Positions 15,762-61,991 are shown, counted from the stretch's first letter. The stretch is DNA of 64,000 bases from Macrostomum lignano (GCA_002269645.1 NIVC01000035.1:859362-923361); one strand, 5' to 3'. A program made the numbers and translations. Notes: a model not told the origin generated them from the letters alone.

Positions 15762-15990
15762 GTTCTTTTAGTAATAGATTTTAGTATATAAGATTGGTGA
15801 AGTAAAAACTTGAATCAGTAAGGTAGATTGAGATTGCAGGGTTGCAGGTTTGCAGGAAGACTATATTCCTACCATTTTCTTACTGTATATAAGGACGGGA
15901 AGAATGAGAGAGTACATTTACGAACTAAAAGAAAGAAGAGTGGGATATGAACGGACATGCTAGGGTTGAGTCACACGAAGCCCAATCTGG

Positions 15991-33891: not shown

Positions 33892-34164
33892 ATGGCATCG
33901 GCAAACATCGCGCCACCGCTGCTTCTGCTGCTGCTGCTGAGCTCACCCGGTGTGTCTTCAGGCCAGGTGTTCCAAGCCGTGTCTGGATTTCTCTGCCAGA
34001 GTTCGTCAGAAACAAGCCTCGAGCCAGGTCGGACATCGAGTGCTCAAACCTCTGCAGCATGGAGCCGCGCTATCAGGCGTTCAGCCTGGCTGACGGTTCG
34101 TGCCAGCTGTTCGTGTTCGACAAGTGCAGCAAGTCGGTGAGGGACTGCGGCTGTTCCAGGAGGG
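33892..34164 (+). pseudogene. 5' fragment of a lectin paralogue (C2, MASANIAP-type N-terminus)
   Basis: Signal peptide MASANIAPPLLLLLLLSS, a frameshifting deletion in the PAN module, and an end after CSKSVRDCGCSRR. Confidence 0.8.
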
Positions 34165-34262: not shown

Positions 34263-34782
34263 TGTAATAGTCCTGTAAAATAATCCATGCACATGTGAGC
34301 TACCAGTGAGATGCTGGAGCTGAGTAGTCCTGTAAAATAATCCATGCACATGTGAGCTACCAGTGAGATGCTGGAGCTGAGTAGTCCTGTAAAATAATCC
34401 ATGCACATGTGAGCTACCAGTGAGATACTGGAGCTGAGTAGTCCTGTAAAATAATCCATGCACATGTGAGCTACCAGTGAGATACTGGAGCTGAGTAGTC
34501 CTGTAAAATAATCCATGCACATGTGAGCTACCAGTGAGATACTGGAGCTGAGTAGTCCTGTAAAATAATCCATGCACATGTGAGCTACCAGTGAGATACT
34601 GAAGCTGAGTAGCCCTGTAAAATAATCCATGCACATGTGAGCTACCAGTGAGATACTGGAGCTGAGTAGTCCTGTAAAATAATCCATGCACATGTGAGCT
34701 ACCAGTGAGATACTGGAGCTGAGTAGCCCTGTAAAATAATCCATGCATATGTAAGCTACCAGTGAGATACTGGAGCTGAGTC
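34263..34782. repeat. 57-bp minisatellite, ~9 copies
   Basis: tgagtagtcc recurs at 34321 and 34378; 19-aa ORF period. Confidence 0.95.
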
Positions 34783-35579
34783 GCCTGAGACCAAATGATC
34801 AGACACATAAGATTTCAAATTATATCAAACTCTATCAGCGGTGTGCCAGTGTGTCGGCTGCTTTTAACACAAACGTTTCCAGCACTATCAATCCAATTTC
34901 TCAAAAGATGCTGGAGCTCCTCTCCAACTCTCTCTCCGCGATCTTCTAGCAGATGTTCCTCTCCGAGAGATGTGTTGTATACCGATTCGAATCCAATGTA
35001 CTTTTATTTTCAGTCGTTGCCCCAGCGTTAATTATTTTGTCTGTGTCCCAAGCAGCTATACCAACTGACTCTATTAAGGCTTGCCTCGAGTTATATCGTT
35101 AAACAAAATATACATGCAACTTAAGCCATGCTCTTCTGATAACAGCCTTCGGCTCAACGCAGTGTCAACGCATAAAACACAACAATGGCGTCGAAAGCAG
35201 GATTCTATTTTATTTTATCCTATTCGCAATAGAATCGATGAAAATTTCTCGCCTACTTAAAAATCAATCAAGCGAGCACTTGATGAGAGTTGAAGCTGAA
35301 TTGTCGATGGCTTGGGATGCAAGGCAGGTGCTGCAGACTCAGACAGCCTGTCAGTCGTATTACTCAAGCTGACAGCAGCAGACGAACAGGTGTAAAATTT
35401 CTTATTCAAAACTCAATATTTACTGCGACAATCCAGCTGTCGTCTTGTTGGTTTAGAAGCCGAGTTTCCCATTTGACTTTATTTAGTCGCGTCTGGCAAA
35501 CAGCTTTAAGCCAGGACTTCATTCGCTTGTAGAGCCCGCTGCAGTTCTGTGCTTGCCGAAGGTCTGAAGAAGCTCCCCA

Positions 35580-36323
35580 ATGGTATCGGCAAACATCGCG
35601 CCGCAGCTGCTTCTGCTGCTGCTGCTGAGCTCACCCGGTGTGTCTTCAGGTCAGGTGTACCAAGCCATGTCTGGCTTTCTCTGCATCCGGCCAGATTTCG
35701 TCAGAAACGAGCCTCAAGCCAGGTCGGACATCGAGTGCTCAAACCTCTGCAGCATGGAGCCGCGCTGTCAGGCGTTCAGCCTGGCTGACGGTCCGTGCCA
35801 GCTGTTCGTGTTTGACAAGTGCAGCAAGTCGGTGAGGGACTGCGGCTGCTCAAGGAGAGGCCGAGTGTTCGTGAAGCGGCAGACGGGACTCGAGCCGGGT
35901 GCGCTGTGTCCGTCCGACTTCGGAGACGACCACTGCGGAGTGAAGTACAAGCTGTTCAATGCGATTAACACCTGGGCAGTGCAGAGACAGAGGTGCGAGT
36001 CGGAGAGCGGTCTGGTGATCATGGCGGACGTGATCGACAGCGCCGAGCTGGCTGCCATCGGACAAGTTTTCAACACGAAGGGTGGCGGCGTCTCCATGTG
36101 GGTCGGCGGCTTCCAGACTCCGGGCAGTGCGGAGCCCGACGGAGGCTGGCGCTGGGTGGCCTGCAACATCAGCTTCGACGCCAGCCTGTGGGGCAGCGGA
36201 GAACCCGACAACCGGTACAGAGGTACCGAGAACGCGGTGGCCGCCCGAACCTTTCTGGGAGACGCTGACAGTCGCGGCGCAGTCAGAACCGGTCTGTGCG
36301 AGTGCCTGTCGCCGTTCAACTGA
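35580..36323 (+). CDS. PAN + C-type lectin paralogue D (247 aa)
   Basis: Intact ORF with an MVSANIAP-type N-terminus and an A/C-type lectin domain. Confidence 0.88.
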   Translation: MVSANIAPQLLLLLLLSSPGVSSGQVYQAMSGFLCIRPDFVRNEPQARSDIECSNLCSMEPRCQAFSLADGPCQLFVFDKCSKSVRDCGCSRRGRVFVKRQTGLEPGALCPSDFGDDHCGVKYKLFNAINTWAVQRQRCESESGLVIMADVIDSAELAAIGQVFNTKGGGVSMWVGGFQTPGSAEPDGGWRWVACNISFDASLWGSGEPDNRYRGTENAVAARTFLGDADSRGAVRTGLCECLSPFN

Positions 36324-38697: not shown

Positions 38698-43293
<4,596 letters not shown>

Positions 43294-46717: not shown

Positions 46718-47458
46718 TCAATTGAAGGGCGACAGGCACTCGCACAGGCCGGTTCTGATTGCATCAAAGCTGGCAGCGTCTCCCAGAAAGGTTCGGGCAG
46801 AAACCGCGTCCTCGGAGCTTCTGAACCGGTTGTCGGGCTCTGCGCTGTCCCACAGGCTGGCATCAATGCTGATGTTGCAGGCCACCCAGCGCCAGCCTCC
46901 GTCGGGCTCCGCACTGCCCGGAGTCTGGAAACCGCCGACCCACATGGCGACGCCACCAGCCTTCGTGCTGTAAACTTGTCCGATGGCAGCCAGCTCGGCG
47001 CTGTCGATCACGTCCGCCATGATCACCAGACCGCTCTCCGACTCGCACCTCTGTCTCTGCACTGTCCAGGTGTTGGTCGTATTGAAGAGCTTGTACTTCA
47101 CTCCGCAGTGGTCGTCTCCGAAGTCGGACGGACACAGCGCACCCGGCTCGAGTCCCGGCTGCTGCTTCACGAACACTCGGCCTCTCCTGGAGCAGCCGCA
47201 GTCCCTCACCGACTTGCTGCACTTGTCGAACACGAACAGCTGGCACGGACCGTCAGCCAGGCTGAACGCCTGACAGCGCGGCTCCATGCTGCAGAGCAGC
47301 GAGCACTCGACGCTCAACTTTGCCAGGGGCTCGTTTCTGACGAACTCTGGCCGGATGCAGAGCGAGCCGTTGATGGCGTGGAACACCTGGCCTGGGGACA
47401 CAGCGGGTGAGCTCAGCAGCAGCAGCAGCAGCAGCGACACAACTTTCATTGATGTCAT
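46718..47458 (-). CDS. PAN + C-type lectin paralogue F (246 aa)
   Basis: Intact ORF; loop EPDNRFRSSEDAVSARTFLGDAASFDAIRT. Confidence 0.88.
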   Translation of the reverse strand: MTSMKVVSLLLLLLLSSPAVSPGQVFHAINGSLCIRPEFVRNEPLAKLSVECSLLCSMEPRCQAFSLADGPCQLFVFDKCSKSVRDCGCSRRGRVFVKQQPGLEPGALCPSDFGDDHCGVKYKLFNTTNTWTVQRQRCESESGLVIMADVIDSAELAAIGQVYSTKAGGVAMWVGGFQTPGSAEPDGGWRWVACNISIDASLWDSAEPDNRFRSSEDAVSARTFLGDAASFDAIRTGLCECLSPFN

Positions 47459-47824: not shown

Positions 47825-49143
47825 CCTCTTCCTGACGAATTGAAAACAAGTCATCTGAATTGCGAACGGGTGGCCTGCATTGCAGGCCATAGAAGAAATT
47901 CTAATTTTGTGAACCTTCTGATCTCCTCACTTAAAGACGGATGGCCTGCTATGCAGGCCATGGCTGCAGGCAACAACGATTTTGTCTATGGGCGTGTTTG
48001 TACTCAGTGTCACAGCTCCTGACTGAAAATTGTACTGGAGTTCTCACTGCATTGACAGGTTGAATAATTTTATAGTTATGTCATATACAGTTGGTTGGAC
48101 TGTCCGCTAAAGACCTGGAGTTTTAGGAAATCTTATGAATGTGGTTAGGAAATTCACTGTAAAAACCTAGCATAAGAGCTTGGATTTTGTAAGAGTTGGC
48201 ATACAGATGCGAGTAGTTATACATGGCATCACTCAACGAAGAACCAAATTTTGAGCAGTTGATGTCTGATGACGAGGATCAAGATAGCAGCGATTCCACT
48301 ACTGACTCGTCCGATGAGGCTTCCGATCTAGACAATGCATCCGTGGATGAAGAAATAGGTGGCTGGCAACGCGTCGTACCCGGAGAGAATGGTTTGCAGG
48401 AGCCAGATTCGGAATTCATGGCGACCTCTGGCTTGCATCCGGATTTGGTGGCGCCAGCTGATCCAGACAACAATATTCAATGGTTTTTCGACCTATTTTT
48501 AACTGACGCGCTGATGAAAAATCTGTGCGAGAGGACCAACAAGAAAGCTTGGTTTGAGTTAGAAAGGTTTCAAGCTGAAGAGCCAGCTGAGGTGCCACCA
48601 ATCTTGAAGACTTGGAAGAATTGCACATTGAACGAGATCAGGAAGGTGATAGCGACCAACTTTTTCATTGGGCTGAGCAAGAAGCCGGAATTGGACCTTT
48701 ACTGGTCTACGGACCCGTTCGACCAGTGCCCTTTCATGCAGCAACCTTCAAGCTTGTCAAGAGATCGATATAAACAAATCATGCACTTCCTGCGCTTCTA
48801 CGACTGCACCGCAATCGCAGACTTGAACGACATTCTAAGAAAGATTCGACCGTTTCTTAGAATTGTGCAGCTGGCAATGCAGAATACTTATTTGCCAGAG
48901 CAGAACATCTGCATTGACGAATCGCTAGTGCTGTACAAAGGACGCCTGATTTTTCGTCAGTACATACCAAGCAAGCGAAACAAGTTTGGCATCAAAATGT
49001 ACCGTCTATGCGAATCCCAGACAGGGTACATGTGGAACTTTTTAATTCACAAGTACGGATGCGGAAAACGGAAAATTTGGACAAGGGCTCCCCAAGGCTT
49101 AGTAAGTCTTAAGAAAGATATTTACCCGATGAAAACGTTTTGA
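47825..49143 (+). mobile_element. Truncated piggyBac-family transposon
   Basis: TTAA (47821-47824) followed by cctcttcc. ORF 48223-49143 has an acidic N-terminus, FFDLFLTD, SRDRY, and CIDESLVLYKGR...FRQYIPSKRNKFGIK. The C-terminal half and right TIR are absent. Confidence 0.88.
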
Positions 49144-49212: not shown

Positions 49213-50565
49213 TCAGTCAGTCAGTCAGTCAGTCAGTCAGTCAGTCAGTCAGTCAGTCAGTCAGTCAGTCAGTCAGTCAGTCAGTCAGTCAGTCAGTCAG
49301 TCAGTCAGTCAGTCAGTCAGCCAGTCAGTCAGTCAGTCAGTCAGTCAGTCAGTCAGTCAGCCAGTCAGTCAGTCAGTCAGTCAGTCAGTCAGTCAGTCAG
49401 TCAGTCAGTCAGTCAGTCAGTCAGTCAGTCAGTCAGTCAGTCAGTCAGTCAGTCAGTCAGTCAGTCAGTCAGTCAGTCAGTCAGTCAGTCAGTCAGTCAG
49501 TCAGTCAGTCAGTCAGTCAGTCAGTCAGTCAGTCAGTCAGTCAGTCAGTCAGTCAGTCAGTCAGTCAGTCAGTCAGTCAGTCAGTCAGTCAGTCAGTCAG
49601 TCAGTCAGTCAGTCAGTCAGTCAGTCAGTCAGTCAGTCAGTCAGTCAGTCAGTCAGTCAGTCAGTCAGTCAGTCAGTCAGTCAGTCAGTCAGTCAGTCAG
49701 TCAGCAGTCAGTCAGTCAGTCAGTCAGTCAGTCAGTCAGTCAGTCAGTCAGTCAGTCAGTCAGTCAGTCAGTCAGTCAGTCAGTCAGTCAGTCAGTCAGT
49801 CAGTCAGCCAGTCAGTCAGTCAGTCAGTCAGTCAGTCAGTCAGTCAGTCAGTCAGTCAGTCAGTCAGTCAGTCAGTCAGTCAGTCAGTCAGTCAGTCAGT
49901 CAGTCAGTCAGTCAGTCAGTCAGTCAGTCAGTCAGTCAGTCAGTCAGTCAGTCAGTCAGTCAGTCAGTCAGTCAGTCAGTCAGTCAGTCAGTCAGTCAGT
50001 CAGTCAGTCAGTCAGTCAGTCAGTCAGTCAGTCAGTCAGTCAGTCAGTCAGTCAGTCAGTCAGTCAGTCAGTCAGTCAGTCAGTCAGTCAGTCAGTCAGT
50101 CAGTCAGTCAGTCAGTCAGTCAGTCAGTCAGTCAGTCAGTCAGTCAGTCAGTCAGTCAGTCAGTCAGTCAGTCAGTCAGTCAGTCAGTCAGTCAGTCAGT
50201 CAGTCAGTCAGTCAGTCAGTCAGTCAGTCAGTCAGTCAGTCAGTCAGTCAGTCAGTCAGTCAGTCAGTCAGTCAGTCAGTCAGTCAGTCAGTCAGTCAGT
50301 CAGTCAGTCAGTCAGTCAGTCAGTCAGTCAGTCAGTCAGTCAGTCAGTCAGTCAGTCAGTCAGTCAGTCAGTCAGTCAGTCAGTCAGTCAGTCAGTCAGT
50401 CAGTCAGTCAGTCAGTCAGTCAGTCAGTCAGTCAGTCAGTCAGTCAGTCAGTCAGTCAGTCAGTCAGTCAGTCAGTCAGTCAGTCAGTCAGTCAGTCAGT
50501 CAGTCAGTCAGTCAGTCAGTCAGTCAGTCAGTCAGTCAGTCAGTCAGTCAGTCAGTCAGCCAGTC
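49213..50565. repeat. (CAGT)n microsatellite, ~1.35 kb
   Basis: Nearly pure tetranucleotide array with only a few interruptions. Confidence 0.98.
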
Positions 50566-50606: not shown

Positions 50607-51293
50607 TCAAACGGCGACACACTCGCACAGCCCGTTCTTTGTCCTGGGATGGTAGGCGTCACCAAGACCAAAGTGAGCAAAGATTGCGTCCTCTTTGCCT
50701 CCTCCGTTGCTGGGCTCCGCTCCGCCCCACAGGCTGGCGTCGAATCTGATGTTGCAGGCCACCCAGCGCCAGCCTCCGTCGGGCTCCGCACTGCCCGGAG
50801 TCTGGAAGCCGCCGACCCACATGGAGACGCCGCCAGCCTTCGTGTTGAAAACTTGTCCGATGGCAGCCAGCTCGGCGCTGTCGATCACGTCCGCCATGAT
50901 CACCAGACCGCTCTCCGACTCGCACCTCTGTCTCTGCACTGCCCAGGTGTTGATCGCATTGAACAGCTTGTACTTCACTCCGCAGTGGTCGTCTCCGAAG
51001 TCGGACGGACACAGCGCACCCGGCTCGAGTCCCGGCTGCTGCTTCACGAACACTCGGCCTCTCCTGGAGCAGCCGCAGTCCCTCACCGACTTGCTGCACT
51101 TGTCGAACACCGTCAGCCAGGCTAAACGCCTGACAGCGCGGCTCCATGCTGCAAAGGTTCGAGCACTCGATGTCCGACCTGGCTCGAGGCTCGTTTCTGA
51201 CAAACTCTGGCCGGATGCAGAGAAAGCCAGACACGGCTTGGAACACCTGGCCCGAAGACACACCGGGTGAGCTCAGCAGCAGCAGCAGCAGCA
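50607..51293 (-). pseudogene. Lectin paralogue G, 3' part (split by a retrotransposon)
   Basis: LLLLLLSSPGVSSGQVFQAVSGFLC..., a ~17-nt frameshifting deletion at ~51110 and a 2-nt deletion near the end; loop EPSNGGGKEDAIFAHFGLGDAYHPRTKN. Confidence 0.87.
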
Positions 51294-54200
51294 CGACCTC
51301 CTACCCGCCAAGTGGGGTGCTGTGGATACGCGATGGCCCGACACCAATCGCGGAACGAAAGGAGGTGTTCTGTTCAACTACAAAGACAGCGCACGCTACG
51401 CTGTCAGCGCCAGGATGATCACCTTGTCTGGTGATGTCGAATCTAACCCCGGCCCACCATCGCCGGGGAGGAACCTGTGCGGAGTTTGCGGCGGAAGGCA
51501 TACTCACAGAGGGCCAAAATGCTCGGAGTGCTCTGGCCAGCTGCATCTTAAGTGCAGTGGGCTGAACAGAGGGAGTTTCTACGCGCAGAAGGTTACCAGC
51601 ATAGAATGGATCGGGCCGTGCTGTAGGAAGGAGCCATTGCAGCCAGCTGGGCCCATTACTCCTGGTGAACGCCGGCCGCCTACCAGCAGTGCGAAATCCG
51701 ATGCAGCCAACCAGGCTGCTGGCCAGTTGCATCTGTCGGAGCAGAAAGTTGTGTGGGCCAAGCTGAGCGGCTGGGGCTGGTGGCCAGTCAGGATGAAGGC
51801 TGAAGACTGGCCATGTGTCGGCAACGAAGTGGTGGTTTGGTGGTTTGGATGCAATGATAAGACTTTTTTTAAAAAAGCCAATAAAAATAACGAATTCACC
51901 ACCTCCGAGACTGACCGCTTTGCGCAGCAGAAAGCAGGTTGGAAGAAAGCCGTAGCGGAAGCCACTGAGTTCGTTCAAAGTGAACAAACGAAAGGAGCCA
52001 GCCAGCCGCCAGGAGAGGTCGAGGAGTATGGTAGGACAGAGCCAAAAGGCTCAGCTAGCGTCAGCCAAGCCTGCGGAGGGAGATGTTCCATCTGTAAAGC
52101 AAATATGAAGTTCGGTATCAGCGGAATTCAGTGCACGGGATGCGGAGTTAGAGTGCACCGCAGCTGTAGCGGATGCAGCAGGTACAACACCCAAGCCCAG
52201 TCCAGCTGGAGATGCGCCAGATGCGGCAGCAGCCCCCGGGGACGACGTCGCGGAGGCTGAGCAGCACCGCAGCAGCGGCGCCTATGACGGTGACCAGCAA
52301 TGCGCTACCAAGGACAGTGGTGGACACTGTGCGGAGTGTCACAAGTACAGAAGGCGAGGCACCGGGGTCAGCTGCGGCGGCTGCGGGAAGACCGTGCACT
52401 GGACCTGCGCGGGCATTGAAAGCCGCGCCTGCAGAGAGAGGTTCAAAAAATATGGTGGATGGGAATGCAGCCTGTGCAGGGCGACCAAGGGGAAGGCCGC
52501 GGAGGTTCAGCGCTTGATTATGCCACCAGTCCGGCAGGGACGGTCGGCAACGAAAGCATCAGAGTCGCGCAGTGGAACTGCGACCACCTCAGAGCCAAAC
52601 TGCCGCTGCTTGAGAAGTTCCTGGACGACCACAACGTTGACGTTATGCTGCTCCAAGAGACCAAGTTGAGGGAGGAAGACGGTACCCTATCTATACCAGG
52701 CTACGAGATTGTCAGAAAAGACCGGCACAGGAAACTCCTCAGTACATTCGGTAGGGGAGGAGGCGTAGCCACGCTCATCAAAGCAGGAATCAAATACGAA
52801 GAGGTGGAATGCAACCTATGCCAGAAGGACGGCATCGAAATGATCGCTACTAAGATCTGGCTGAGAAGAGACCGCTCCAGCAACGGCAACGGCAACAGTG
52901 TCCAGATAGCGAATGTGTACATCCCGCCTGAAGGGTCCAGAGCGGTGAGCAGCGAGGCCATCAACAAACTCCCAGCAGGCAGGAATTGGCTAATCGCTGG
53001 CGACTTTAACGCCCACCACTCCCTCTGGGACAACATCTGTCCAGGTGACGACAGAGGTACAGCGCTCGTTGAGTGGCTGGACAACAATGAATTAGCTGTG
53101 CTCAATGATGGCAGCGTCACTAGGGTTGATCCCACCGGGAGCATCAAATCATCGCCAGATATCACCTTCTGTAGCAGAGAGGACGAACCCATATGGTCCT
53201 GGGAAACAGCTCAGCTGCACGGGTCGGACCACCACCCCATCATCATGCAGCTAGGGCATGGCTGCAGCAACAGAGAGCCAGCCAGAAAGATCATCAGCTG
53301 GAATTGGAAAGCCGCTGACTGGACAGCCTACAGAGACAACATCGAAGCCGGCCTGGCAGAATCGATTTGCGGCGCTGGATGCGTTAAGGAGAATGAGAAA
53401 AAGATCAGGGATATCATCATCAATGCTGCGAGAGCGTCGGTCGGTACCATTGCGCGCACAACCCGGAACCGGTCCTCCATCAACGACGAGGTGAGGGAAG
53501 CCCTGGAGGAACTTGGCAAGTGCGACGCCTCAGCTGAACCGGAGCTATGGGCCGAAAAAGAACAACGGCTCAAGTCTGAGATTAGGAAAAGCAAGGAGGA
53601 GGATGGGCGAAACCACCTGAGTAACAACGCGAGCAGTGCAAAAATGTGGTCAGTAGTCAAACGCCTCAATGGCAAAAGCTGCCCTGCAGCTGCCCTGCGT
53701 GAGATGGAAACTTCAGCGGAAGCAGAAATGGACCAGCCCATCCTCATGTCCGAAGTCGTGAGTGCGCTTGAAGCCATGGATGGTAACTATAGGAGGTTGC
53801 GCGCCTGTCGAGTTAAGCGGCTAAATATGTTTGCTTGCGCCTCCTTTTGATTTCAATTAGCCTTTCAACTTTACTGGCTTTACTGTTCAATCGAAAGTTT
53901 AGAACACAAGTTTTTGTTCGAACGATAGTTGTTAGGCCGCCAGTTTGCTCGCTCGCAAGTTGGCCCATTTCTACTTTTCCGCACTTATATTTATACAACA
54001 AAATTTGCCTCAGTCAGCGTTATTTCAAACCAATAGCAATTGCAAGAAAGTCTGGGAATTATTTTTTTGGTGCGAAAGTTTGGATGTCTGCGTGCCAGTT
54101 TCATGTGAACAGCGAAATCGGACACCGCCGTTGTGCGTCATTCGGCGGCTCCACCAGTGTTGCAGCTGTATCGATGTCGCAGATTTTGGGCGCTGATCTC

Positions 54201-56992
54201 AGCAGTTTTCGTGAGAACCAGACGTTCAGGCGTTCTTAGTGCAAGCCAAGTTCAGCCGGCTAAACTTTTCTAACTTTCACTTGTGCAACAATTGAGCGTT
54301 GGGAAGCACAATGAACTCCTGCTGAACTGGTCTTGCTGTCCTGAGCCGATCGGCTGATTGTTGCGTACTGCTGAGATCGTTGATGCTGCTGCTGCTGATG
54401 GTGCAAGCCGAGCTACGTTGGGTGTCTTAGACAAAAGCTAGCGTCCGCAACGTTGGGGCCTACTTCATAACTTTGGTCCCCTCGCTCCAGGCTCACATTG
54501 GGTCCTCTCGTTGCCGTCCAGCCTCGCCAGGTGACTCGACCAGGTGACACGACCAGGTGACCTAGCCTATCCCCGTTCCTAGACTTATGAGCATTTTCTT
54601 ATGGCTCTTAGTAACAAAGCGGCCGGCGAAGACCTTATCCACCCCAGGCTCCTCAAGGAATTGCCATCCAACAGCCTACCTGTCATCACTAGCCTCTTCA
54701 ACGACTCCTACAGGCAGGCCGAAGTGCCCCAGAGCTGGCGCACGGCTAGAATCATCCCGCTCCTGAAGCATGGCAAAGATGCTGAATGCATACCCTCATA
54801 CAGGCCGATCAGCCTCACATCCTGCCTAGGCAAATGGCTTGAAAGAGTTATCACCAACAGAATTAGTTACCACCTCGAGAGCAAAGGGCTCCTTAGCGAC
54901 TGCCAGGCTGGGTTTAGGGCTGGCAGATCCACGGAGGACCAACTACTCAGGCTCGCGCAGGACGCCGATGACGGCTTTCAGAAGAAAATCTGTACGCTTT
55001 TGCTACTGGTGGATTTCGAGCGAGCGTTCGACAAAGTGCTCCGCACCGGCCTCATCTGGAAACTGATCAGCAAAGGAGTGGGCAGGCTCTCGATCAGATG
55101 GATACAAGCGTGGCTGAGTCACAGATTAGCTAAAGTCAACTTCAATGGCAAGGACAGCAAGCTTAAAGTGCTCGAGCAAGGCCTGCCGCAAGGCTCCGTC
55201 CTGTCGCCGCTGCTGTTCCTGGTCTACATTGACGACCTCCTAGAAGGTCTCAGCGCGGTCGAGGGGGTCAAAGTTAGCGGCTTCGCGGACGACCTCGCCA
55301 TCTGGACCTCTGGCAGGCAAGACCAGATGCGCGCGAGTATGGATAAAGCCATCCAGCTCACGGAGACTTGGAGCAATAACTGGCTTATGCCGATTGCAGT
55401 AAGCAAGTGTTCCCTCACGCTTCTGTCCACGACTAGCACTAGAACCAGCCTAGAAGACACCACCTTCACGATGTACGGCAGCACTATCAGCTGGGCCCCA
55501 ACCGCGAAGTTCCTGGGGCTCACCTTCGACAGAACGCTGAAGTTCGAGACGCTCGTTAACAACATCAAAGAGGCATGCCTTAAGAAAGTTAACATATTAA
55601 GGAAACTGGCTGGCAGTGACTGGGGCTGGAGCCTGGAGCTAATTAAAATCACGTACGAAGCTCTTATTAAGAGCAAGATCCTGTACGGCGCTCCAGCATG
55701 GATGCCTTGGATCAGCGAAAGCAGCTGGCACAAGCTCGAAGTGATACAGCGCTCAGCTGAAAGGATCATGACTGGTCTCATGGCTACTACCCCGGTTGAA
55801 GCGCTCAGTATGGAAAGCGGCCTTGAGCCCCTCAAAGTGTGCAGCAAGGCCAGATGGGCCGAGAAATTCGACCGCCTCAGACGACAGCCCCCGGTAGCAT
55901 CAGAAGAGAGCTGGTTGGCGAAGGGCCAAAGCAGAGGCTTAAAAGAAAAGGCTGGAGAGCCCGAGCTAAAGAGTTGCTTGATGACCATGGTCTGCTCAAC
56001 ATCACAGTGGAGAAGGATGAACAACCTGCCACGCTGGCCCCATGGGAGGAAAGGAAATTCACGATTCACATGGAAGGCCGGCGCAAGCTTTGCGAAGCTG
56101 ACAACAGGAACCTGGCCGAGAACATCATCCAAAGCTGCGCAGCCGACGCAGACCTCATCCTCTACACGGACGGATCAGTTAGCAGTGACGGTAAAGGTGG
56201 TGGCGGAGTCGTTGTGACAGCCAAAGGGATCGACGGCTGGGACACACAAACCCGTATTGAGGTCGACGCCGGCAAGCCCTGCAGCTCACTCCAGGCTGAG
56301 CTGCACGCACTGCAAGCAGCCACTGATTGGATCCGTCACCATGGCCGGGGAAAAAGCACCTGCATTGCCACGGACAGCCTCAGCAGCCTCCAGCTCCTCC
56401 ACAGCAGGAGAAGTAATCCGATAGCCAATAGAATCACCAACAACTTGCAGGCAGCCAGTGAGACCAACGGCCGGCTCATCATTTGCTGGGTCCCGGCCCA
56501 CTGTGGCCTCAGCGGGATCGAAGAGGCCGACACCACGGCAAAGGCCGCAGCCGGCAGACCAGCTGGAGGAGCCGGTGTGCTTGCCAACCCGGTTAAGAGA
56601 TCCATCTACCGAGACCTGACCAGAGCGAAGGAATGGAGCCACCAACGCAGCAAAGAGACCTACAGCAAAGGCCCCAAAAGCAACTGGAAGAAGGACTATG
56701 CAGACCGCAGCGAAGCAGTGAGCTTCAGACGCTTCCGTACCGGACACTCCCTCGAACTGAACCAGTTCCGCAAGAGACTTGGCAACCAGGACAGTGACAG
56801 CTGCAGGCTATGTGGAGATGGCGAAGAATCCAACTCGCACTTAATGGATTGCCCGGCTACGTGGAAAAGGAGGCAGGAGTACAACATCACCGGCCTGTGC
56901 GATCTGTGGAACCAACCAGACGCTGCCTACAGGTTCTGGAACTGGATCAAAGAAGCGCATGAGTTGAGCGGCACACACACACACACACACAC
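51294..56992 (+). mobile_element. Ingi-like non-LTR retrotransposon: 2A-like peptide, PHD-PWWP-PHD-PHD, APE, RT, RNase H, Zn finger; (CA)n tail
   Basis: GDVESNPGP (51430-51456); three C4HC3-like fingers; VVWAKLSGWGWWP...WWFG...WKKAVAEA; QWNC...LLQETK...GDFNAH...GSDH; YRPISL...GLPQG...FADD; YTDGS...QAEL...TDS...WVPAHC; CRLC...H...C. About three frameshifts and one nested insertion. (CA)n at 56972-56992. Confidence 0.88.
53788..54610. mobile_element. 823-bp unclassified non-coding insertion with a 5-bp direct repeat GTAAC
   Basis: gtaac at 53783-53787 and 54611-54615. Removing the insert and one repeat copy restores ...EAMDGNKAAGED... in frame. No TIR seen. Confidence 0.8.
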
Positions 56993-57050
56993 GCAGCAGC
57001 AGCAGCAGCAGCAGCAGAAGCAGCCGCGGCGCGATGTTTGCGGATGCCAT
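56993..57050 (-). pseudogene. Lectin paralogue G, 5' part (start codon and signal peptide)
   Basis: MASANIAPRLLLL...; the upstream sequence is homologous to that of D and C2. Confidence 0.87.
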
Positions 57051-57672
57051 TCACTGCAGTTTCTTCGATTCAGTTTCCAAGCTCTCAATTTCACAGGTTC
57101 TTCAAGCACAGAATGCTGAAAAATTACAGAGGGCTCTGCAAGCGCAAGAGTCCCGGCTGGCTTGCTGTTTGCCAGACGCGACTAAATAAAGTCAATTTGA
57201 GAACCTCGTGCTCCTCCAGAATCAACAAGACGACAGAGCTGTATTGCCAGAATAAATATTGAGTTTTGAATGAACGATCTTGCACCTGTTTGTCTGTTGG
57301 TGTCAGATTGAATAACTACTGACAGGGCTGTCTGAGTCTGCAGCACCTGCCTTGCGTCCCAAGCCATGCAACTTCAAGTCTCTTTAAGTGCTCGCTTGTT
57401 TGACTTTTAAGTGGGTGAGAAACTTTCATTGACTCTGCTGGGTTGCGGGTTGAGTATAAAGTATAAGTACAAGTCATCTCGAGAGCTCAATGAGAAATGT
57501 CTGCTACAAAATCGCGGACGCGAAGAGAGAGTTAGATAAGAGCTTCAGCATCTCTTGAGAAATTGAATTGATGGTGCTGAGAACGTTTGTGCTAATCAGC
57601 GGACGCACTGGCACACTGCTGATAGAGTTTGATATAATTTGAAGTGTCATGAGTCTCATTTGGTCTCTGACG

Positions 57673-57962
57673 ACTCAGCTCCAGTATCTCACTGGTAGCT
57701 CACATGCACATGGATTATTTTACAGGACTACTCAGCTCCAGTATCTCACTGGTAGCTTACATGCACATGGATTATTTTACAGGGCTACTCAGCTCCAGTA
57801 TCTCACTGGTAGCTTACATGCACATGGATTATTTTACAGGGCTACTCAGCTCCAGTATCTCACTGGTAGCTTACATGCACATGGATTATTTTACAGGGCT
57901 ACTCAGCTCCAGTATCTCACTGGTAGCTCACATGCACATGGATTATTTTACAGGACTACTAC
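57673..57962. repeat. 57-bp minisatellite, ~5 copies, reverse orientation relative to 34263-34782
   Basis: Reverse complement of the same unit, in a paralogous upstream block. Confidence 0.93.
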
Positions 57963-60914
57963 TTCAGTCCAAATGAGAGTTCGGCTGCAGTTGGGTGTTA
58001 ATGTTCATGGGCCAAAAAGCAGACTTTACTGCTGAGTTTCTGGACTTCATATGATGTCAGACGGAGAGAAAATCTCTCTTACTCTCTTGAAGAGAGAGAG
58101 AGAGAATTAAGTCGAGTGTCTAAACGCACGAACTCCCACTTCCAGACGTCAAGCCTAGTAACAAAATTCAGTGATCACTTACTGGTGCGGGCTCCTCTTC
58201 TTTGTCGGGCAGGTTCTCCGAGCTCGTTTCTTCAATTCTTCTTCATCCGGAACAGTCTTCTTGAGTTCTAAAATCGGCCGAATATGAGAGCTTAACAGTT
58301 TAATCCGTCGACGTCGAAGTAGTCCTCAAGTGCAGAAATCAAAGATGCGCCCAAATAATTGAGGTCCTCCAGAAAGGCCGTCTTCTTCTAGAAATAACGG
58401 AATCGGAGTCGTGTGCCCCTATCGGTTACTCTAGGGTACCAAAATCAATTAATCGATAATCCTCTAAGGGTATCGGAATCAGTCCGCAGATCCTATCCAA
58501 TCCCTTAGGAATAGGGAGGCCTCAAATTCAATAACCCAGTAAATTAAGCCTCTTGCAAAGCCCAAGATCTCTTGAGGCTTATCCGAGTCTGAGATATCAG
58601 CTAGGATTTTCGCTTGTATTTGTACACAATTTGTCGGCCTTGTTCACGATGAGTTGCGCGCTCAACCTCATCCGTCTGCTGCTGGCCTCCGTTCTCATCT
58701 ACTGCGACGGCTCAGCGTCAGCTACTGGTCGCTCCACTAACGGTGAGCCCTCCGCACCGGTATTGGGGCAGCGCATCACTGTCGCCGGTGTTACACTTTA
58801 AACTATCCGGGTTTTTTTGTCTGGCCCGGATATCCGAACGCACTTACAATATCCGCCCGGATACTGCCAAGCAAAAAACCTGCTTTTTTTCTCCTTCCCG
58901 GATTTCTTGAGCTGCTTTGCATTGTCTGGGCACTTTGAGATGTCTCTTCCGGACATCGTACGGCACTGACTCTGCTATCCGGCCCGGAGATCACAAGAAG
59001 GGGAAGTTGTCTTGGGACATCCGACTGTAGGTTGAAAGAGAGTGGTCAGTCTGCGGAGACAAAGGTTTGCTTTAGGACATCCGGCTACTGATATCCGGGG
59101 CTAGAAATAGCTAAATTTCTAGATCAATTTTCGCAAAGTACGCTAGTAGAAAATCACTTTTTGCTACTTTTCAATCGGAAACATCTACGTCATGCTTATT
59201 TAACTGCATGTGTATATTTCAATAACAGTTTCGCATTTCACACGCTCCAAAAGAATTAAAGTTAAAGCTACTACTGTCAACCGAAAAGTTACTCCCCTCC
59301 CCAATCTGATTCGATAAATCAAAAACTGGCGATCCGCCGAATGAAGCGTGAATTTTTTTCCAAAACGTAGGACTTGGACAAGAAATATATTCCAACTATC
59401 TGAAAAGAATGGGTGTATTATAATTTGCGCAACACATTCTTTTGCGGGCTATTAGCTCGTACACTGATATTCATGGCATGTACGCTTGTGCGGGTGCTTT
59501 TAACGGCAGTCTATTATCGATTTATTCTTAGACTGTATGATTGCATCTTATCCGCCCCTCCCAAGCACTCTGAGTCAGTCCCATTCTCGCTTAATGGTGT
59601 CCTTCTGCCCCACGCATTCGCATGCGCCTGCCGCCTCTGGCCCACTCGATCCCTCTTCCGTCTTGCCAGGTCCCTCTGCTCTGGATCCCCGGGCACGCGG
59701 GCATCAAAGTCAACGATTTTTCGACCTACGCGCGGACGCCGCTGCCTCTCCCGTCTTCTGGGCTCCTTTTTAGCTCCGCCTGAGGCAAACATCGTCTCAG
59801 AAAGTTTTATTTTATGACTATAGTCTTTAGTAGCTCTCTGCTCAAGCTAATCGTGGAGCCTTCAATTGCAACCTGTAGTAGTTTTACTAAAGCTTTTGTG
59901 GTGTCGCAAGTACATCGATTTTAGTACGAGAAGTAGCATTTTCCTAACGTGTGCATAATATTTTTCTGCTAATACTAAAAGTAGTCCAATGTGCTGCTAA
60001 CAAACTGCTAACGAACGACATACTTATGTCTTTCAGGTATGGGATAATATAATGAAGCACTGTTCAATTATTTATTGTCTTCATAGCCAACTGTGGAGCT
60101 ATTGATGCCGATTCCCATGCCCTCCGAAATTGAAGACAGGCTTAAATAACTGGAAGCGGTACAGCAATTTAACATCAATCATAGTTGGAGCTAATTAGCA
60201 GGCTGCAATTAAAAATGTTCGTAAAAATGTCAGATCTACGACAAGCAGGAACTTGCCGCTTCTACGGGCAGGTAGGTTTTAGGTAATGATCAACACACAG
60301 CAAATGTGGGACCTTGAGCCCCGCAGTCAGTCAAAAAATTAACGGTGCGCTGCCTCCCTAAACTGGGACACACACTGCTTCCTCTGCCGTCCTTTGACGT
60401 CCCACTGGTGCGCCTGTTGGGTCGCCTCATCATAACTCCGAAAACCAAAATAGTGTTGGATATTGCTAACACTTTCGGAGTTATGATATTTCGGGTTTAT
60501 GATGCCACCCCGCCTGCCGACTAAGCTAAGACCAAAGCAACCGAATATAGCAATGAATAAATTATCAATAGTAAGCACTTTTTCTCGAAAAGTGCCATTT
60601 CATAGGAATGATAATAAATAGGTCTTTTACTTTGTTTAAAAGGAGCCATTACAGCTTTTCTCTTTCGACTAGCGTTCCGTTTCAATGATACTTCAAGTAC
60701 TGCATACGAGCGTTTTTCGTAAGATAGTTACAGATCTCTAAAACTTCCAAACTGCAAAATTGAACAAAACCCAAAAATGTTGGAAAAATAAGCACGGGAA
60801 TATTGATGAGAAGAGCTCCGGCGGAACAATCGTACAGACTCATGTGACTACACGCCGGATGCCTACGAAAGTTTAGCCTGAATTCAAAGCAAACACCTTG
60901 AGTTCATTTTTTCG

Positions 60915-61649
60915 TCATTCGAAGGGCGACACGCACTCGCACAGCCCGTTCCTTGACTCTTGTTGGTAGGCGTCACCAAGAACAAAGCGAGCAAAGACTG
61001 CGCCCTCGCTGCCTCCTCTGTTGTCGGGCTCTGCGCTGGCCCACAGGCTGGCGTCGAAGCTGATGTTGCAGGCCACCCAGCGCCAGCCTCCGTCGGGCTC
61101 CGCACTGCCCGGAGTCTGGAAGCCGCCGACCCACATGGCGACGCCGCCAGCCTTCGTGCTGTAAACTTGTCCGATGGCAGCCAGCTCGGCGCTGTCGATC
61201 ACGTCCGCCATGATCACCAGACCGCTCTCCGACTCGCACCTCTGTCTCTGCACTGTCCAGGTGTTGGTCGTATTGAAGAGCTTGTACTTCACTCCGCAGT
61301 GGTCGTCTCCGAAGTCGGACGGACCCAGCGCACCCGGCTCGAGTCCCGGCTGCTGCTTCACGAACACCCGGCCTCTCCTGGAGCAGCCGCAGTCCCTCAC
61401 CGACTTGCTGCACTTGTCGAACACGAACAGCTGGCACGGACCGTCAGCCAGGCTGAACGCCTGACAGCGCGGCTCCATGCTGCAGAGGTTTGAGCACTCG
61501 ATGTCCGACCTGGCTCGAGGCTCGTTTCTGGTAAACTCGGGCCGGATGCAGAGCGAGCCGTTGATGACGTGGAACACCTGGCCTGGGGACACACCGGGTG
61601 AGCTCATCAGCATCAGCAGCAGCAGCGACACAACTTTTATTGATGTCAT
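60915..61649 (-). CDS. PAN + C-type lectin paralogue H (244 aa)
   Basis: Intact ORF from MTSIKVV; loop EPDNRGGSEGAVFARFVLGDAYQQESRN. Confidence 0.88.
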   Translation of the reverse strand: MTSIKVVSLLLLMLMSSPGVSPGQVFHVINGSLCIRPEFTRNEPRARSDIECSNLCSMEPRCQAFSLADGPCQLFVFDKCSKSVRDCGCSRRGRVFVKQQPGLEPGALGPSDFGDDHCGVKYKLFNTTNTWTVQRQRCESESGLVIMADVIDSAELAAIGQVYSTKAGGVAMWVGGFQTPGSAEPDGGWRWVACNISFDASLWASAEPDNRGGSEGAVFARFVLGDAYQQESRNGLCECVSPFE

Positions 61650-61991
61650 GCTCGACGCTCTCAAGTTTCTAAGGGACCTGGAGTTTCTTAGATGCTGTTT
61701 TGGGAGCTTATTTTGAAAAAAAGGCAAAAATGTTTTGCAGAAGAGACGCACTTTATGGCCGCCCTGATGTTTGAATCCTCATTGAGCAGCTCTGCTCTGA
61801 CCAATCCAAGGGATCTGTTTTAATCTTTGGACTTGAGAATTTCGCCAATTGGCCAAACGGATGAGCTGCAGGAGTTGCAGTCGCTTGCAGACCAAATGTG
61901 CAGTTTTGAATGTCTGCTCCAGTCTGGCGAGTAGGTGACTGAGCTTCTCCAATGCCAGCAATGGTCATTGGGTCCATGAAAATTGACTGCC

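What the first reader, a model, noticed from the sequence alone, without database searches (positions are those of the whole stretch)
51415..52480. Ingi-like retrotransposon carrying a PHD-PWWP-PHD-PHD chromatin-reader array behind a 2A-like peptide
Seen: ITLSGDVESNPGP; PHD1 (CGVC...CSEC...HLKC...WIGPCC); a convincing PWWP-like domain at ~51730-51975 (VVWAKLSGWGWWP...VVVWWFG...WKKAVAEATEF); PHD2 (CSIC...CTGC...HRSC...WRCARC); and PHD3 in the +1 frame (CAEC...CGGC...HWTC...WECSLC). These lead into APE-RT-RNase H as one apparent polyprotein (compensating +1/-1 shifts near 52230 and 52480). Established: 2A-like motifs and PHD fingers occur in Ingi and CR1-group elements, and PWWP domains read H3K36me2/3 on gene bodies and tether HIV integration via LEDGF. 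I do not recall PWWP being described in a non-LTR element; this needs a database check. Inference: an element-encoded histone-mark targeting module, consistent with this copy landing in a coding exon.
Basis: partly seen in the sequence, partly recalled or inferred. Interest (0 to 1): 0.85.

Follow-up and report, generated by a model that had tools for sequence, protein, structure and literature searches.

The report
Retrotransposon carrying its own PWWP reader
A dead but full-length copy of a jumping gene (a non-LTR retrotransposon) encodes, ahead of its enzymes, a 2A "skipping" peptide and four chromatin-reader modules; one is a genuine PWWP domain, which I found described in no paper on such elements, though one flatworm relative carries it too.

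Summary
On the + strand, in order, lie MITLSGDVESNPGP, PHD1, a PWWP domain, PHD2, PHD3 (in the +1 frame), then APE, RT, RNase H and a CCHC knuckle.

A paralogous empty site bounds the insertion at about 51286-56993.

The PWWP is real:
- It scores below Pfam's cut-off here (21.4 bits against 25.6).
- Its best matches among solved structures are all PWWP domains.
- A predicted model matches only PWWP folds.
- The three aromatic-cage positions are all Trp.

The closest relative, Macrostomum lignano A0A1I8J844, has the same 2A-PHD-PWWP-PHD-PHD-APE order, and its PWWP passes the Pfam cut-off. About 55 other relatives are 2A-PHD(2-3)-APE without PWWP. The PWWP therefore marks a sublineage and is not a capture at this locus.

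2A-PHD-APE elements are already published. I found no paper describing PWWP in a retrotransposon.

The exon hit is also real: the element sits in the poly-Leu (CTG)n of a secreted-protein gene. However, it is antisense and lies inside a CAG repeat that matches the element's own ends. It therefore says nothing about chromatin targeting. "Ingi-like" could not be tested. Chromatin tethering is inferred, not shown.

Verdict: a new variant of a known kind, of moderate to high interest.

The parts
51286..56993 (+). Whole retrotransposon copy. The ends are ambiguous within CAG repeats: outer limits 51274-57017, core 51292-56993. About 5.7 kb including an 825-bp nested insertion.
   Evidence: The paralogous empty site at window 36201->34176 (minus strand) is colinear with 50715-51293 plus 57003-58053. 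There is no second copy in the window.
51286..51414 (+). 5' end and leader: CAGCAGCAC, about 15 nt, then the conserved motif AAGTGGGGTGCTGTGGA (51310-51326). The frame is open up to the 2A, but the only in-frame ATG is at 51415.
   Evidence: The same CAGCAGCAC...AAGTGGnGTGCTGyGG motif sits at the 5' junction of metagenomic relatives L010 and L001. The insertion is therefore not 5'-truncated. The in-frame stop at 51268-51270 lies in the host flank.
51415..51456 (+). 2A / StopGo-like peptide MITLSGDVESNPGP
   Evidence: Exact match to -GD(V/I)ExNPGP- (PMC3708506). It is conserved at the same position in 23 of the 48 related proteins scanned and in the metagenomic loci L001-L009 and L010.
51478..51624 (+). 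PHD1, a C4HC3 finger whose last ligand pair is an adjacent CC
   Evidence: Seven ligand columns (six Cys, one His) are invariant in the 21-sequence alignment A6. The AF2 model has pLDDT 80.7. The best Foldseek matches, including every match with TMq of 0.55 or more, are PHD fingers (PPS, Pygo, DIDO, MLL, BPTF), with TMq 0.65-0.70 among the best. The homologous finger in P0009 passes the Pfam PHD cut-off (49.6 bits).
51742..51972 (+). PWWP domain: VVWAKLSGWGWWP...VVVWWFG...WKKAVAEATEF
   Evidence: Pfam PF00855 E = 3.6e-4, 21.4 bits, below the 25.6 cut-off. phmmer against PDB: PWWP2B 9.4e-6, ZMYND11 1.1e-4, NSD2 1.2e-3; nearly all of the 30 listed matches are PWWP proteins. AF2 model pLDDT 73.5, five strands plus helices. 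The top 50 Foldseek hits are all PWWP domains.
52084..52224 (+). PHD2 (canonical C4HC3)
   Evidence: Pfam PHD_2 E = 3.6e-6 and PHD 1.4e-4. Both reach the cut-off in the frame-repaired protein.
52233..52241 (+). Frameshift 1, at the homopolymer run CCCCCGGGG
   Evidence: The reading frame changes from 1 to 2 here. P0001 reads through the equivalent region in a single frame.
52328..52477 (+). PHD3 (C4HC3), in the +1 frame
   Evidence: Pfam PHD E = 1.1e-3. Weak PDB matches to the TAF3, Pygopus and ZMYND11 PHD fingers. It is colinear with the third finger of P0001.
52480..52560 (+). Frameshift 2, which returns to frame 1; not localised more precisely
   Evidence: Three-frame translation.
52567..53244 (+). 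AP-endonuclease (APE) domain
   Evidence: Pfam Exo_endo_phos_2 E = 1.5e-20 and Exo_endo_phos 9.2e-14.
53780..54603 (.). Nested 825-bp insertion that interrupts ...SEVVSALEAM|ALSNKAAGEDL..., flanked by ATGG on each side
   Evidence: No in-frame GT-AG splice removes it, and the window holds no other copy.
54790..55527 (+). Reverse transcriptase domain
   Evidence: Pfam RVT_1 E = 1.4e-35.
55887..55893 (+). Frameshift 3 between RT and RNase H, at a CCCCC run
   Evidence: The P0001 sequence, compared by eye with the window's frames, places the shift at ...EGSIRRRL...
56151..56552 (+). RNase H domain
   Evidence: Pfam RNase_H E = 8e-11.
56802..56852 (+). C-terminal CCHC knuckle CRLCGDGEESNSHLMDC
   Evidence: Weak Pfam zf-RVT hit, E = 5.4e-3; sequence. 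The same motif is present in L001, L010 and P0001.
56972..57017 (+). 3' simple-repeat tail: (CA)11 G (CAG)8. The CAG part is shared with, or duplicated from, the target.
   Evidence: junction alignment.
50607..51291 (-). Host exon, downstream part: the mature part of a secreted PAN/CTLD-like protein, which also carries a frameshift
   Evidence: At least 8 paralogous copies in the window. Four have intact ORFs of about 245 aa at 88-91% identity.
57003..57050 (-). Host exon, upstream part: start codon and signal peptide MASANIAPRLLLLLLLL, cut off from the rest by the insertion
   Evidence: The paralog consensus reads MKVVSLLLLLLLSSPG....

Best explanation
This is one full-length but inactivated copy of a single-ORF, APE-type, RNase-H-bearing non-LTR retrotransposon.

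Its polyprotein begins with a short leader that ends in a canonical 2A (StopGo) peptide. After the NPG|P skip, the released protein reads PHD1, PWWP, PHD2, PHD3, AP endonuclease, reverse transcriptase, RNase H, CCHC.

The PWWP is a bona fide domain with a Trp/Trp/Trp aromatic cage. It was inserted between PHD1 and PHD2 in a sublineage of a much larger 2A-PHD(2-3)-APE group. It is retained in the only other sublineage member found, in the flatworm Macrostomum lignano.

Most likely mechanism (inferred, not shown): the N-terminal array is an element-encoded chromatin tether. The PWWP would dock the RNP on H3K36me2/3-marked nucleosomes and DNA. The PHD fingers would bind the H3 tail; their closest folds are H3K4me-reading PHDs. 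The attached endonuclease would then nick, and target-primed reverse transcription would start, in transcribed chromatin. The exact nick site would be set locally by base-pairing between the element's simple-repeat ends and the target, here a CAG run.

I put about 0.9 on the anatomy and the lineage-conserved PWWP, and about 0.45 on the chromatin-targeting function.
For: Anatomy:
- Domains and their order.
- Boundaries from a paralogous empty site.
- Complete 5' end shared with relatives L001 and L010.

PWWP is real:
- PDB sequence matches are PWWP2B (9.4e-6), ZMYND11 and NSD2.
- The predicted fold matches only PWWP structures, including LEDGF/PSIP1, HRP-2/3, DNMT3A and BS69.
- In the ZMYND11 alignment, cage residues F291, W294 and F310 align with W, W, W. 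F291A+W294A abolishes H3K36me3 binding (PMC12636335).

Conservation:
- P0001 (UniRef100_A0A1I8J844, M. lignano) aligns colinearly over 785 columns at 36% identity, E = 1.4e-141.
- Its PWWP scores 40.4 bits, above the Pfam cut-off.
- In an APE-based NJ tree, the window element and P0001 are sisters (92% bootstrap). PWWP-less P0049 is the next branch out (93%).

PHD fingers:
- PHD1's fold is closest to the H3K4me readers PPS, Pygo, DIDO and BPTF.

Precedent:
- TE-encoded readers that direct integration are known, such as the chromodomain of MAGGY. Retrotransposon fusions to PYGO-like PHD fingers are also reported (bioRxiv 10.1101/2021.11.30.470311).
Against: - No binding or insertion-profile data exist.
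- Only one copy is in the window, and only two PWWP-bearing members are known.
- The window's PWWP is below Pfam's curated cut-off.
- Taken alone, the two TE PWWPs score lower to each other (33.5 bits) than to cestode host PWWP proteins (40-48 bits). Independent capture is therefore not fully excluded.
- Single PHD fingers match solved PHD and C1 domains only weakly (E = 0.01-0.2), so their ligands are unknown.
- The one visible insertion is explained by CAG microhomology and is antisense to the gene.
- PWWP and PHD domains also bind nucleic acids, so an ORF1-like role is possible.
Confidence: 0.5

Rival explanations
1. The PHD-PWWP-PHD-PHD array replaces ORF1p. It would be a nucleic-acid-binding, chaperone or nuclear-import module needed for RNP assembly in a single-ORF element, with no role in choosing chromatin.
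For: - The element has no ORF1.
- Odon et al. note that PHD domains occur in ORF1p of CR1-type elements, and that 2A elements mostly lack ORF1 (PMC3708506).
- PWWP domains bind DNA, as in the HRP3-DNA complexes among the fold hits.
- Single PHD fingers match both PHD and C1 zinc fingers only weakly.
Against: - The methyl-lysine cage is fully aromatic in both TE PWWPs. A pure nucleic-acid binder would not need that.
- PWWP-less sister elements manage without it.
- PHD1's nearest folds are histone-tail readers.
Confidence: 0.22
2. Site choice in this family is driven by sequence. The simple-repeat ends of the element pair with (CAG)n or (AAC)n at the nick. The exon hit is a by-product of CAG/CTG codon repeats, and the reader array matters little for targeting.
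For: - The insertion lies inside (CAG)n. The empty site reads (CAG)5AAGCAGC. After insertion there are (CAG)6 on the left and (CAG)8 on the right.
- The element's 5' end starts CAGCAGCAC in the window, L010 and L001.
- L001 and L010 are head-to-tail tandems joined by (AAC)n(AGC)2, as expected if new copies land in the tails of older ones.
Against: - This explains local site choice but not why a cage-intact PWWP is retained at the protein's N-terminus.
- It is compatible with, not exclusive of, chromatin tethering.
- Only three junctions were seen.
Confidence: 0.5
3. The PWWP is a neutral passenger: a host exon transduced or captured into the element, possibly twice independently, and not used by it.
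For: - Each TE PWWP is slightly closer to cestode host PWWP proteins than to the other TE PWWP.
- Only 2 of about 57 related elements carry it.
Against: - It sits in the identical slot (PHD1 | PWWP | PHD2), in frame, in two elements whose APE domains are only 42% identical and which group as sisters.
- The cage and core motifs are conserved, and the window's PWWP coding region has no stop or frameshift.
Confidence: 0.1
4. Artefact: an assembly or gene-model chimera that joins a host PWWP/PHD gene to a LINE.
For: [quoted passage not shown]
- P0001 is an automatic gene model with an internal RT deletion.
Against: - In the window, the whole array lies inside one insertion that is bounded by an empty-site paralog, with a family-typical 5' end and 3' tail.
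- The array reads continuously with 2A and APE, broken only by homopolymer frameshifts.
Confidence: 0.03

Closest known systems
2A-PHD-APE non-LTR retrotransposons of Odon et al. 2013 (Crack-17_BF, CR1-1/17/26_BF, STR-24/25/34/35_SP; PMC3708506)
   Same: A canonical GD(V/I)ExNPGP 2A lies near the N-terminus of the single long ORF, and PHD finger(s) sit between the 2A and the APE domain. They occur in aquatic invertebrates.
   Different: Those elements belong to the CR1/Crack clades, which (from my own knowledge) lack RNase H. None is reported with a PWWP; the paper mentions PWWP zero times. Here there are three PHD fingers plus a PWWP, and an RNase H.
Ingi / L1Tc (trypanosomes) and Ingi-1_AC (Aplysia)
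   Same: Single ORF, an N-terminal active 2A, and APE-RT-RNase H order (PMC3708506).
   Different: In L1Tc and Ingi the 2A lies immediately upstream of APE with no reader domains; the paper does not describe what follows the 2A in Ingi-1_AC. Clade membership of the window element was not testable here.
Macrostomum lignano UniRef100_A0A1I8J844, 'PWWP domain-containing protein' (P0001)
   Same: Same order: 2A, PHD, PWWP, PHD, PHD, APE, (RT), RNase H, CCHC. It aligns at 36% identity over 785 columns and is the sister in the APE tree.
   Different: It is a different, deeply diverged family. It is an automatic gene model with 195 extra N-terminal residues and most of the RT deleted. It is named only by its Pfam hit, and I found no paper that describes it as a transposon.
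Chromoviruses (Ty3/gypsy LTR retrotransposons with a chromodomain on integrase, e.g. MAGGY)
   Same: The element encodes its own methyl-lysine reader of the Royal superfamily, fused to the integration machinery.
   Different: LTR elements using integrase rather than non-LTR elements using TPRT. It sits at the C-terminus rather than the N-terminus.
HIV-1 integrase with host LEDGF/p75 (PSIP1) PWWP tether
   Same: A PWWP domain reading H3K36me2/3 steers retroelement integration into active gene bodies (my own knowledge). The PSIP1 PWWP (4fu6) is among the fold matches.
   Different: HIV borrows a host protein. Here the PWWP is encoded in cis by the element. No functional data exist for the element.
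Cnidarian retrotransposon fusions with PYGO-like PHD fingers (Grau-Bove et al., bioRxiv 10.1101/2021.11.30.470311)
   Same: Retrotransposon ORFs that carry PHD fingers of the Pygo (H3K4me-reading) type. Pygo PHD is among the best fold matches for PHD1 and among the sequence matches for PHD3.
   Different: In the part of their table that is held, the only PWWP entry alongside LINE domains is a likely host ZCWPW-LINE chimera. A 2A-PHD-PWWP architecture is not described.

Membership tests
APE-type non-LTR (LINE) retrotransposon | AP-endonuclease domain N-terminal to a reverse transcriptase in one ORF | tested here: met
   Exo_endo_phos_2 E = 1.5e-20 and RVT_1 E = 1.4e-35, on the same strand and in order.
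APE-type non-LTR (LINE) retrotransposon | Discrete insertion without LTRs or TIRs, ending in a 3' simple-repeat or A-rich tail | tested here: met
   An empty-site paralog bounds the insertion. The 3' end is (CA)11G(CAG)n. The window self-comparison shows no repeat of either end of the element.
APE-type non-LTR (LINE) retrotransposon | Target-site duplication | tested here: inconclusive
   Both junctions lie in (CAG)n, so a duplication of up to about 15 bp can be neither delimited nor excluded.
Ingi clade | RT domain groups with Ingi/L1Tc reference sequences in an RTclass1-type phylogeny | not testable with these tools
   No Repbase, Dfam or reference RT set was reachable. The supplement of PMC3708506 that holds such sequences is not held.
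Ingi clade | RNase H downstream of RT, a single ORF without ORF1, and a 2A near the N-terminus | tested here: met
   These features are also compatible with other RNase-H-bearing clades such as I and Nimb, so they do not prove membership.
PWWP domain (Pfam PF00855) | Score at or above Pfam's gathering cut-off (25.6 bits) | tested here: not met
   The window copy scores 21.4 bits, or 22.1 bits with frames repaired. The homologous domain in P0001 scores 40.4 bits and passes.
PWWP domain (Pfam PF00855) | Five-stranded beta-barrel followed by helices, matching solved PWWP structures | tested here: met
   The AF2 model has strands E10-16, 22-28, 39-43, 49-52 and 57-60 plus two helices, pLDDT 73.5. 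The top 50 Foldseek PDB hits are all PWWP, with TMq up to 0.62. Most sequence matches are PWWP domains.
PWWP domain (Pfam PF00855) | Aromatic cage for methyl-lysine (three aromatic positions) | tested here: met
   In the ZMYND11 alignment, F291, W294 and F310 align with W, W, W (SGW-G-W-W-P ... VW-W-FG). The first two positions are Trp in P0001 (TGWPWWP) and the third aligns to W of VKWLG. The role of F291 and W294 is from PMC12636335. F310 is from my own knowledge.
PWWP domain (Pfam PF00855) | Binds methylated histone (H3K36me2/3 or other) and DNA | not testable with these tools
   This needs peptide or nucleosome binding assays.
PHD finger | C4HC3 zinc-ligand pattern with canonical spacing | tested here: met
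   PHD2 and PHD3 are canonical. PHD1 has all seven ligand columns invariant but ends in CC where some relatives have CxxC.
PHD finger | Pfam gathering cut-off and PHD fold | tested here: met
   Single ORF fragments fall just below the cut-off. The frame-repaired protein reaches PHD_2 28.9 of 28 and PHD 24.1 of 24. The PHD1 model's best Foldseek matches are all PHD fingers, with TMq 0.65-0.70 among the best. The homologous fingers in P0009 score 49.6 bits.
2A / StopGo recoding peptide | C-terminal signature -GD(V/I)ExNPGP- | tested here: met
   GDVESNPGP at 51430-51456; signature as given in PMC3708506.
2A / StopGo recoding peptide | A suitable upstream tract and an upstream start codon (published elements have the 2A about 40-80 aa from the N-terminus) | tested here: inconclusive
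   The only in-frame ATG is five codons before GDVESNPGP. Relatives have L-rich tracts (RLLLLGGDVE...) and Met-initiated leaders of 30-50 aa. Here the tract reads ARMITLS, and the ATG at 51333 is in another frame. The leader of this copy is probably damaged.
2A / StopGo recoding peptide | Ribosome-skipping activity | not testable with these tools
   This needs a dual-reporter translation assay.

The most novel reading that the evidence does not exclude
A lineage of single-ORF non-LTR retrotransposons has built its own LEDGF-like tether. A cage-intact, H3K36me-type PWWP is combined with H3K4me-type PHD fingers and fused directly to the endonuclease and RT, so that target-primed reverse transcription is steered into transcribed genes. 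This would be the first self-encoded PWWP targeting module in any mobile element. The N-terminal 2A would free the enzyme from whatever is translated upstream.
Probability: 0.35. Interest if true: 0.8.

Novelty: new variant of a known kind. Interest (0 to 1): 0.62.

Why it matters
**Known background.** Mobile elements are known to choose chromatin in two ways. Some encode a reader themselves, as with the chromodomains of chromoviruses. Others borrow a host reader, as HIV integrase borrows the PWWP of LEDGF.

**What would be new.** A non-LTR element that carries a PWWP in cis would show that the same H3K36me solution arose inside a LINE-type element. For LINEs, target choice is usually put down to endonuclease sequence preference and 3'-end pairing.

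**Why it is testable.** There is a natural comparison between PWWP-bearing and PWWP-less sister families. One carrier genome, Macrostomum lignano, is a tractable laboratory animal. Whether histone marks guide LINE integration could therefore be tested directly.

**Possible use.** A compact PHD-PWWP array that evolved to work when fused to a reverse transcriptase may interest those who engineer targeted retroelement insertion.

**If it has no targeting role.** The finding would still add PWWP to the list of domains recruited by non-LTR elements.

Tried and rejected
- **Protein searches with limited return.** The word-indexed search with the N-terminal ORF alone found nothing. The two-sequence profile found only host PWWP proteins and one PWWP-less element. 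The frame-repaired 2A-to-APE protein found five relatives, none with a PWWP.
- **Exhaustive HMMER search.** This was the productive one, but it yielded only one PWWP-bearing relative.
- **Metagenome scan.** It returned 9 loci, all without PWWP.
- **Source organism.** Exact-sequence look-ups of ten window ORFs and of the APE ORF were not on record. The P0001 contig look-up also failed. The organism therefore remains unidentified.
- **Rfam.** A scan of the window gave no hits, so there is no SINE or RNA clue for the nested insertion.
- **Nested insertion as an intron.** Rejected: no GT-AG pair restores the frame.
- **Exon-trap idea.** I considered that the element relies on in-frame read-through from the host gene, with the 2A releasing the TE protein. 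I rejected it for this copy because the element is antisense to the gene and an in-frame TGA lies just upstream in the host flank, within about 20 nt of the 5' junction. Relatives also have their own Met-initiated leaders.
- **Flanking repeat as another transposon.** Rejected in favour of a multi-copy secreted-protein gene family, because four paralogs keep intact ORFs of about 245 aa with a signal peptide. Pfam support is only a weak PAN_4 hit, and the C-type-lectin resemblance is by eye only.
- **Clade assignment.** Literature and supplement searches failed to supply reference sequences.
Full report
**1.

Reading the + strand from 51415 gives MITLSGDVESNPGP, followed by:
- a C4HC3 finger, PHD1 (51478-51624);
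- a PWWP-like stretch (about 51742-51972);
- a second finger, PHD2 (52084-52224);
- a third finger, PHD3 (52328-52477), after a +1 shift;
- after a -1 shift, AP endonuclease, reverse transcriptase and RNase H.

Pfam gives Exo_endo_phos_2 E = 1.5e-20, RVT_1 E = 1.4e-35 and RNase_H E = 8e-11. A six-frame motif scan of the whole 64-kb window finds the 2A signature, the [FWY]x[FWY]WP motif and C4HC3 patterns nowhere else. The array is therefore not a chance pile-up.

**2. It is a discrete, full-length insertion**

- **Flanks.** The sequence up to about 51293 and from about 57003 belongs to a roughly 600-bp unit present at least eight times in the window.
- **Empty site.** One paralog (36201->34176, minus strand) is colinear with both flanks and lacks the element, so it serves as an empty site.
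- **5' end.** CAGCAGCAC, about 15 nt, then AAGTGGGGTGCTGTGGA. This is shared with the 5' junctions of two metagenomic relatives, L010 and L001. The copy is therefore not 5'-truncated.
- **3' end.** (CA)11 G (CAG)8.
- **Damage.** There are frameshifts at 52233-52241 and 55887-55893, both at CCCCC runs, and one more within 52480-52560. An 825-bp nested insertion lies at 53780-54603, flanked by ATGG. The homopolymer context means some of the shifts could be assembly errors.

**3. The PWWP is genuine**

- **Pfam.** The window's domain scores 21.4 bits against a cut-off of 25.6 (E = 3.6e-4).
- **Solved structures, by sequence.** The significant matches are all PWWP domains: PWWP2B 9.4e-6, ZMYND11 1.1e-4 and NSD2 1.2e-3. 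MSH6, HDGF and DNMT3A/B follow at weaker scores.
- **Fold.** An AlphaFold2 model (pLDDT 73.5) has the five-strand barrel plus helices. Its top 50 Foldseek hits in the PDB are all PWWP structures, including BS69/ZMYND11, HRP-2/3, HDGF, DNMT3A and LEDGF/PSIP1.
- **Aromatic cage.** In the ZMYND11 alignment, cage residues F291, W294 and F310 align with Trp, Trp, Trp. F291A+W294A abolishes H3K36me3 binding (PMC12636335).

**4. The PHD fingers**

- PHD2 and PHD3 are canonical C4HC3 fingers.
- With frames repaired, the protein reaches Pfam's cut-offs (PHD_2 28.9 of 28; PHD 24.1 of 24).
- PHD1 keeps seven invariant ligand columns across 21 relatives. In this sublineage it ends in CC, where some relatives have CxxC.
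- The PHD1 model (pLDDT 80.7) matches PHD fingers, best those of PPS, Pygo, DIDO, MLL and BPTF, with TMq 0.65-0.70 among the best.
- Taken one at a time, the fingers match solved PHD and C1 domains only weakly. Their ligands cannot be assigned.

**5. The 2A peptide**

- GDVESNPGP matches the published signature exactly (PMC3708506). It is conserved at the same position in most relatives.
- The only in-frame ATG lies five codons upstream of the motif.
- Relatives have a Leu-rich tract before the motif and Met-initiated leaders of 30-50 residues, often hydrophobic.
- The leader of this copy looks damaged. StopGo activity cannot be judged from sequence.

**6. Relatives**

- **Closest relative.** An exhaustive HMMER search gave 45 hits. 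The best, P0001, is UniRef100_A0A1I8J844 from the flatworm Macrostomum lignano, auto-named 'PWWP domain-containing protein'.
- **Same architecture.** P0001 aligns colinearly with the window's 2A-to-APE region over 785 columns (36% identity, E = 1.4e-141). It has the same 2A-PHD-PWWP-PHD-PHD-APE order, and its PWWP scores 40.4 bits, above the cut-off.
- **Relatives without PWWP.** Every other relative seen is 2A-PHD(2-3)-APE. This covers the other hits of the exhaustive search, P0048, P0049-P0053, and loci L001-L010.
- **Tree.** In an NJ tree of the APE region, the window element and P0001 are sisters (92% bootstrap). PWWP-less P0049 is the next branch out (93%).
- **Reading.** The simplest explanation is one acquisition of a PWWP between PHD1 and PHD2, retained through deep divergence (APE identity 42%).
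- **Caveat.** Domain alone, each TE PWWP scores a little higher to cestode host PWWP proteins than to the other TE PWWP. Two fast-evolving copies of one ancestor would give this pattern, but so would two independent captures.

**7. What is already known**

- Odon et al. 2013 already describe PHD domains between the 2A and APE in Crack, CR1 and STR elements. They describe 2A directly before APE in Ingi and L1Tc. They never mention PWWP.
- Grau-Bove et al. catalogue 823 chromatin-TE fusions, dominated by Chromo and PHD, including PYGO-like PHD fusions to cnidarian retrotransposons.
[quoted passage not shown] It looks like a host ZCWPW-LINE chimera.
- Five further full-text searches found no description of a PWWP in a retrotransposon.
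- Repbase and Dfam could not be consulted. 'Ingi-like' therefore stays untested.

**8. The exon hit**

- **The host gene.** The flanking unit encodes a secreted protein of about 245 aa on the minus strand. It has a signal peptide (MKVVSLLLLLLLSSPG), a weak PAN hit and a lectin-like C-terminal half. Four paralogs have intact ORFs.
- **The insertion point.** The element sits inside the (CTG)n poly-Leu codons of the signal peptide, antisense to the gene.
- **A simpler explanation.** The site is a (CAG)n run, and the element's own 5' end starts CAGCAGCAC. Relatives L001 and L010 are head-to-tail tandems joined by (AAC)n(AGC)2. End-to-target microhomology therefore explains this site.
- **Conclusion.** One insertion cannot speak to chromatin bias.

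**9. Mechanism**

- **Shown.** The anatomy, the fold, the aromatic cage and the conservation of the PWWP in a second, diverged element.
- **Inferred.** After StopGo, the polyprotein's N-terminal reader array docks on nucleosomes. The PWWP would bind H3K36me2/3 and DNA. The PHD fingers would bind the H3 tail. The endonuclease and RT would then act in transcribed chromatin, and the simple-repeat ends would fix the exact site.
- **Rivals.** An ORF1-like nucleic-acid-binding role, purely sequence-driven targeting, a neutral passenger domain, and an artefact. Each is weighed in its own section.

**10. Verdict**

This is a real feature. It is a new variant of a known kind: a transposon-encoded chromatin reader of a type not previously described in such elements. 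It rests on two diverged elements and no functional data. I score interest at 0.62.

Noticed in passing
window 7536-8333(-), 32711-33460(-), 46718-47458(-), 60915-61751(-); partial copies at 31525-32054, 33920-34162, 35608-36201, 50607-51291: A multi-copy, single-exon gene family for a secreted protein of about 245 aa. It has a poly-Leu signal peptide, a weak PAN_4 hit and a C-type-lectin-like WVGG...GGWRWV...EPDN half. Paralogs are 88-91% identical and lie in both orientations across the window.
   Followed up: partly
window 52233-52241 and 55887-55893: Two of the three frameshifts in the element sit in the same context, agCCCCCgg. They could be homopolymer indel errors of the assembly rather than mutations, so the copy may be less decayed than it looks.
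   Followed up: no
window 53780-54603: An 825-bp sequence interrupts the start of the RT, flanked by ATGG on each side. It has no coding similarity, no other copy in the window and no Rfam hit, and it cannot be spliced out in frame.
   Followed up: partly
L001 1-700; L010 1-760; proteins P0003 and P0010: Metagenomic relatives occur as head-to-tail tandems joined by (AAC)n AGCAGCAC. In L010 and P0003, an ATG inside the upstream copy's 3' end (MVEAG...) opens a frame that runs through the repeat and 5' UTR into the 2A of the next copy. This may be coincidence, or a tandem-dependent way of starting translation.
   Followed up: no
proteins P0002, P0004, P0006, P0007; L010 about 560-690: The leaders upstream of the 2A in relatives are 30-50 residues long and strongly hydrophobic, like a signal peptide or membrane segment. 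This recalls the published '2A-like signal sequences' (PMC4981915; title and abstract only seen).
   Followed up: no
window 39737-43204 (+): A second, unrelated non-LTR element with an intact 1155-aa ORF (APE, RT, RNase H; 29% RT identity to the studied element). It has no 2A, PHD or PWWP.
   Followed up: partly
window 14127-19382(-), 26356-28082(-), 48223-49143(+): P-element/THAP9-like transposase ORFs (THAP, Tnp_P_element and TNP-like RNase H/GBD domains) and a piggyBac-like (DDE_Tnp_1_7) fragment. The window is very rich in transposons.
   Followed up: partly
window 49213-50565; 57669-57960 and 34268-34785: A 1.35-kb pure (TCAG)338 microsatellite lies immediately upstream of the disrupted host gene. 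A 57-bp tandem repeat (5 copies) lies downstream and is repeated at the paralogous locus.
   Followed up: partly
proteins P0046, P0047 (cestode host proteins): The host PWWP domains nearest to both TE PWWPs are from tapeworm proteins (Anoplocephala perfoliata and a Logan assembly). This hints that the domain was captured from a flatworm-type host gene, and that the window may come from a flatworm or a related invertebrate.
   Followed up: no
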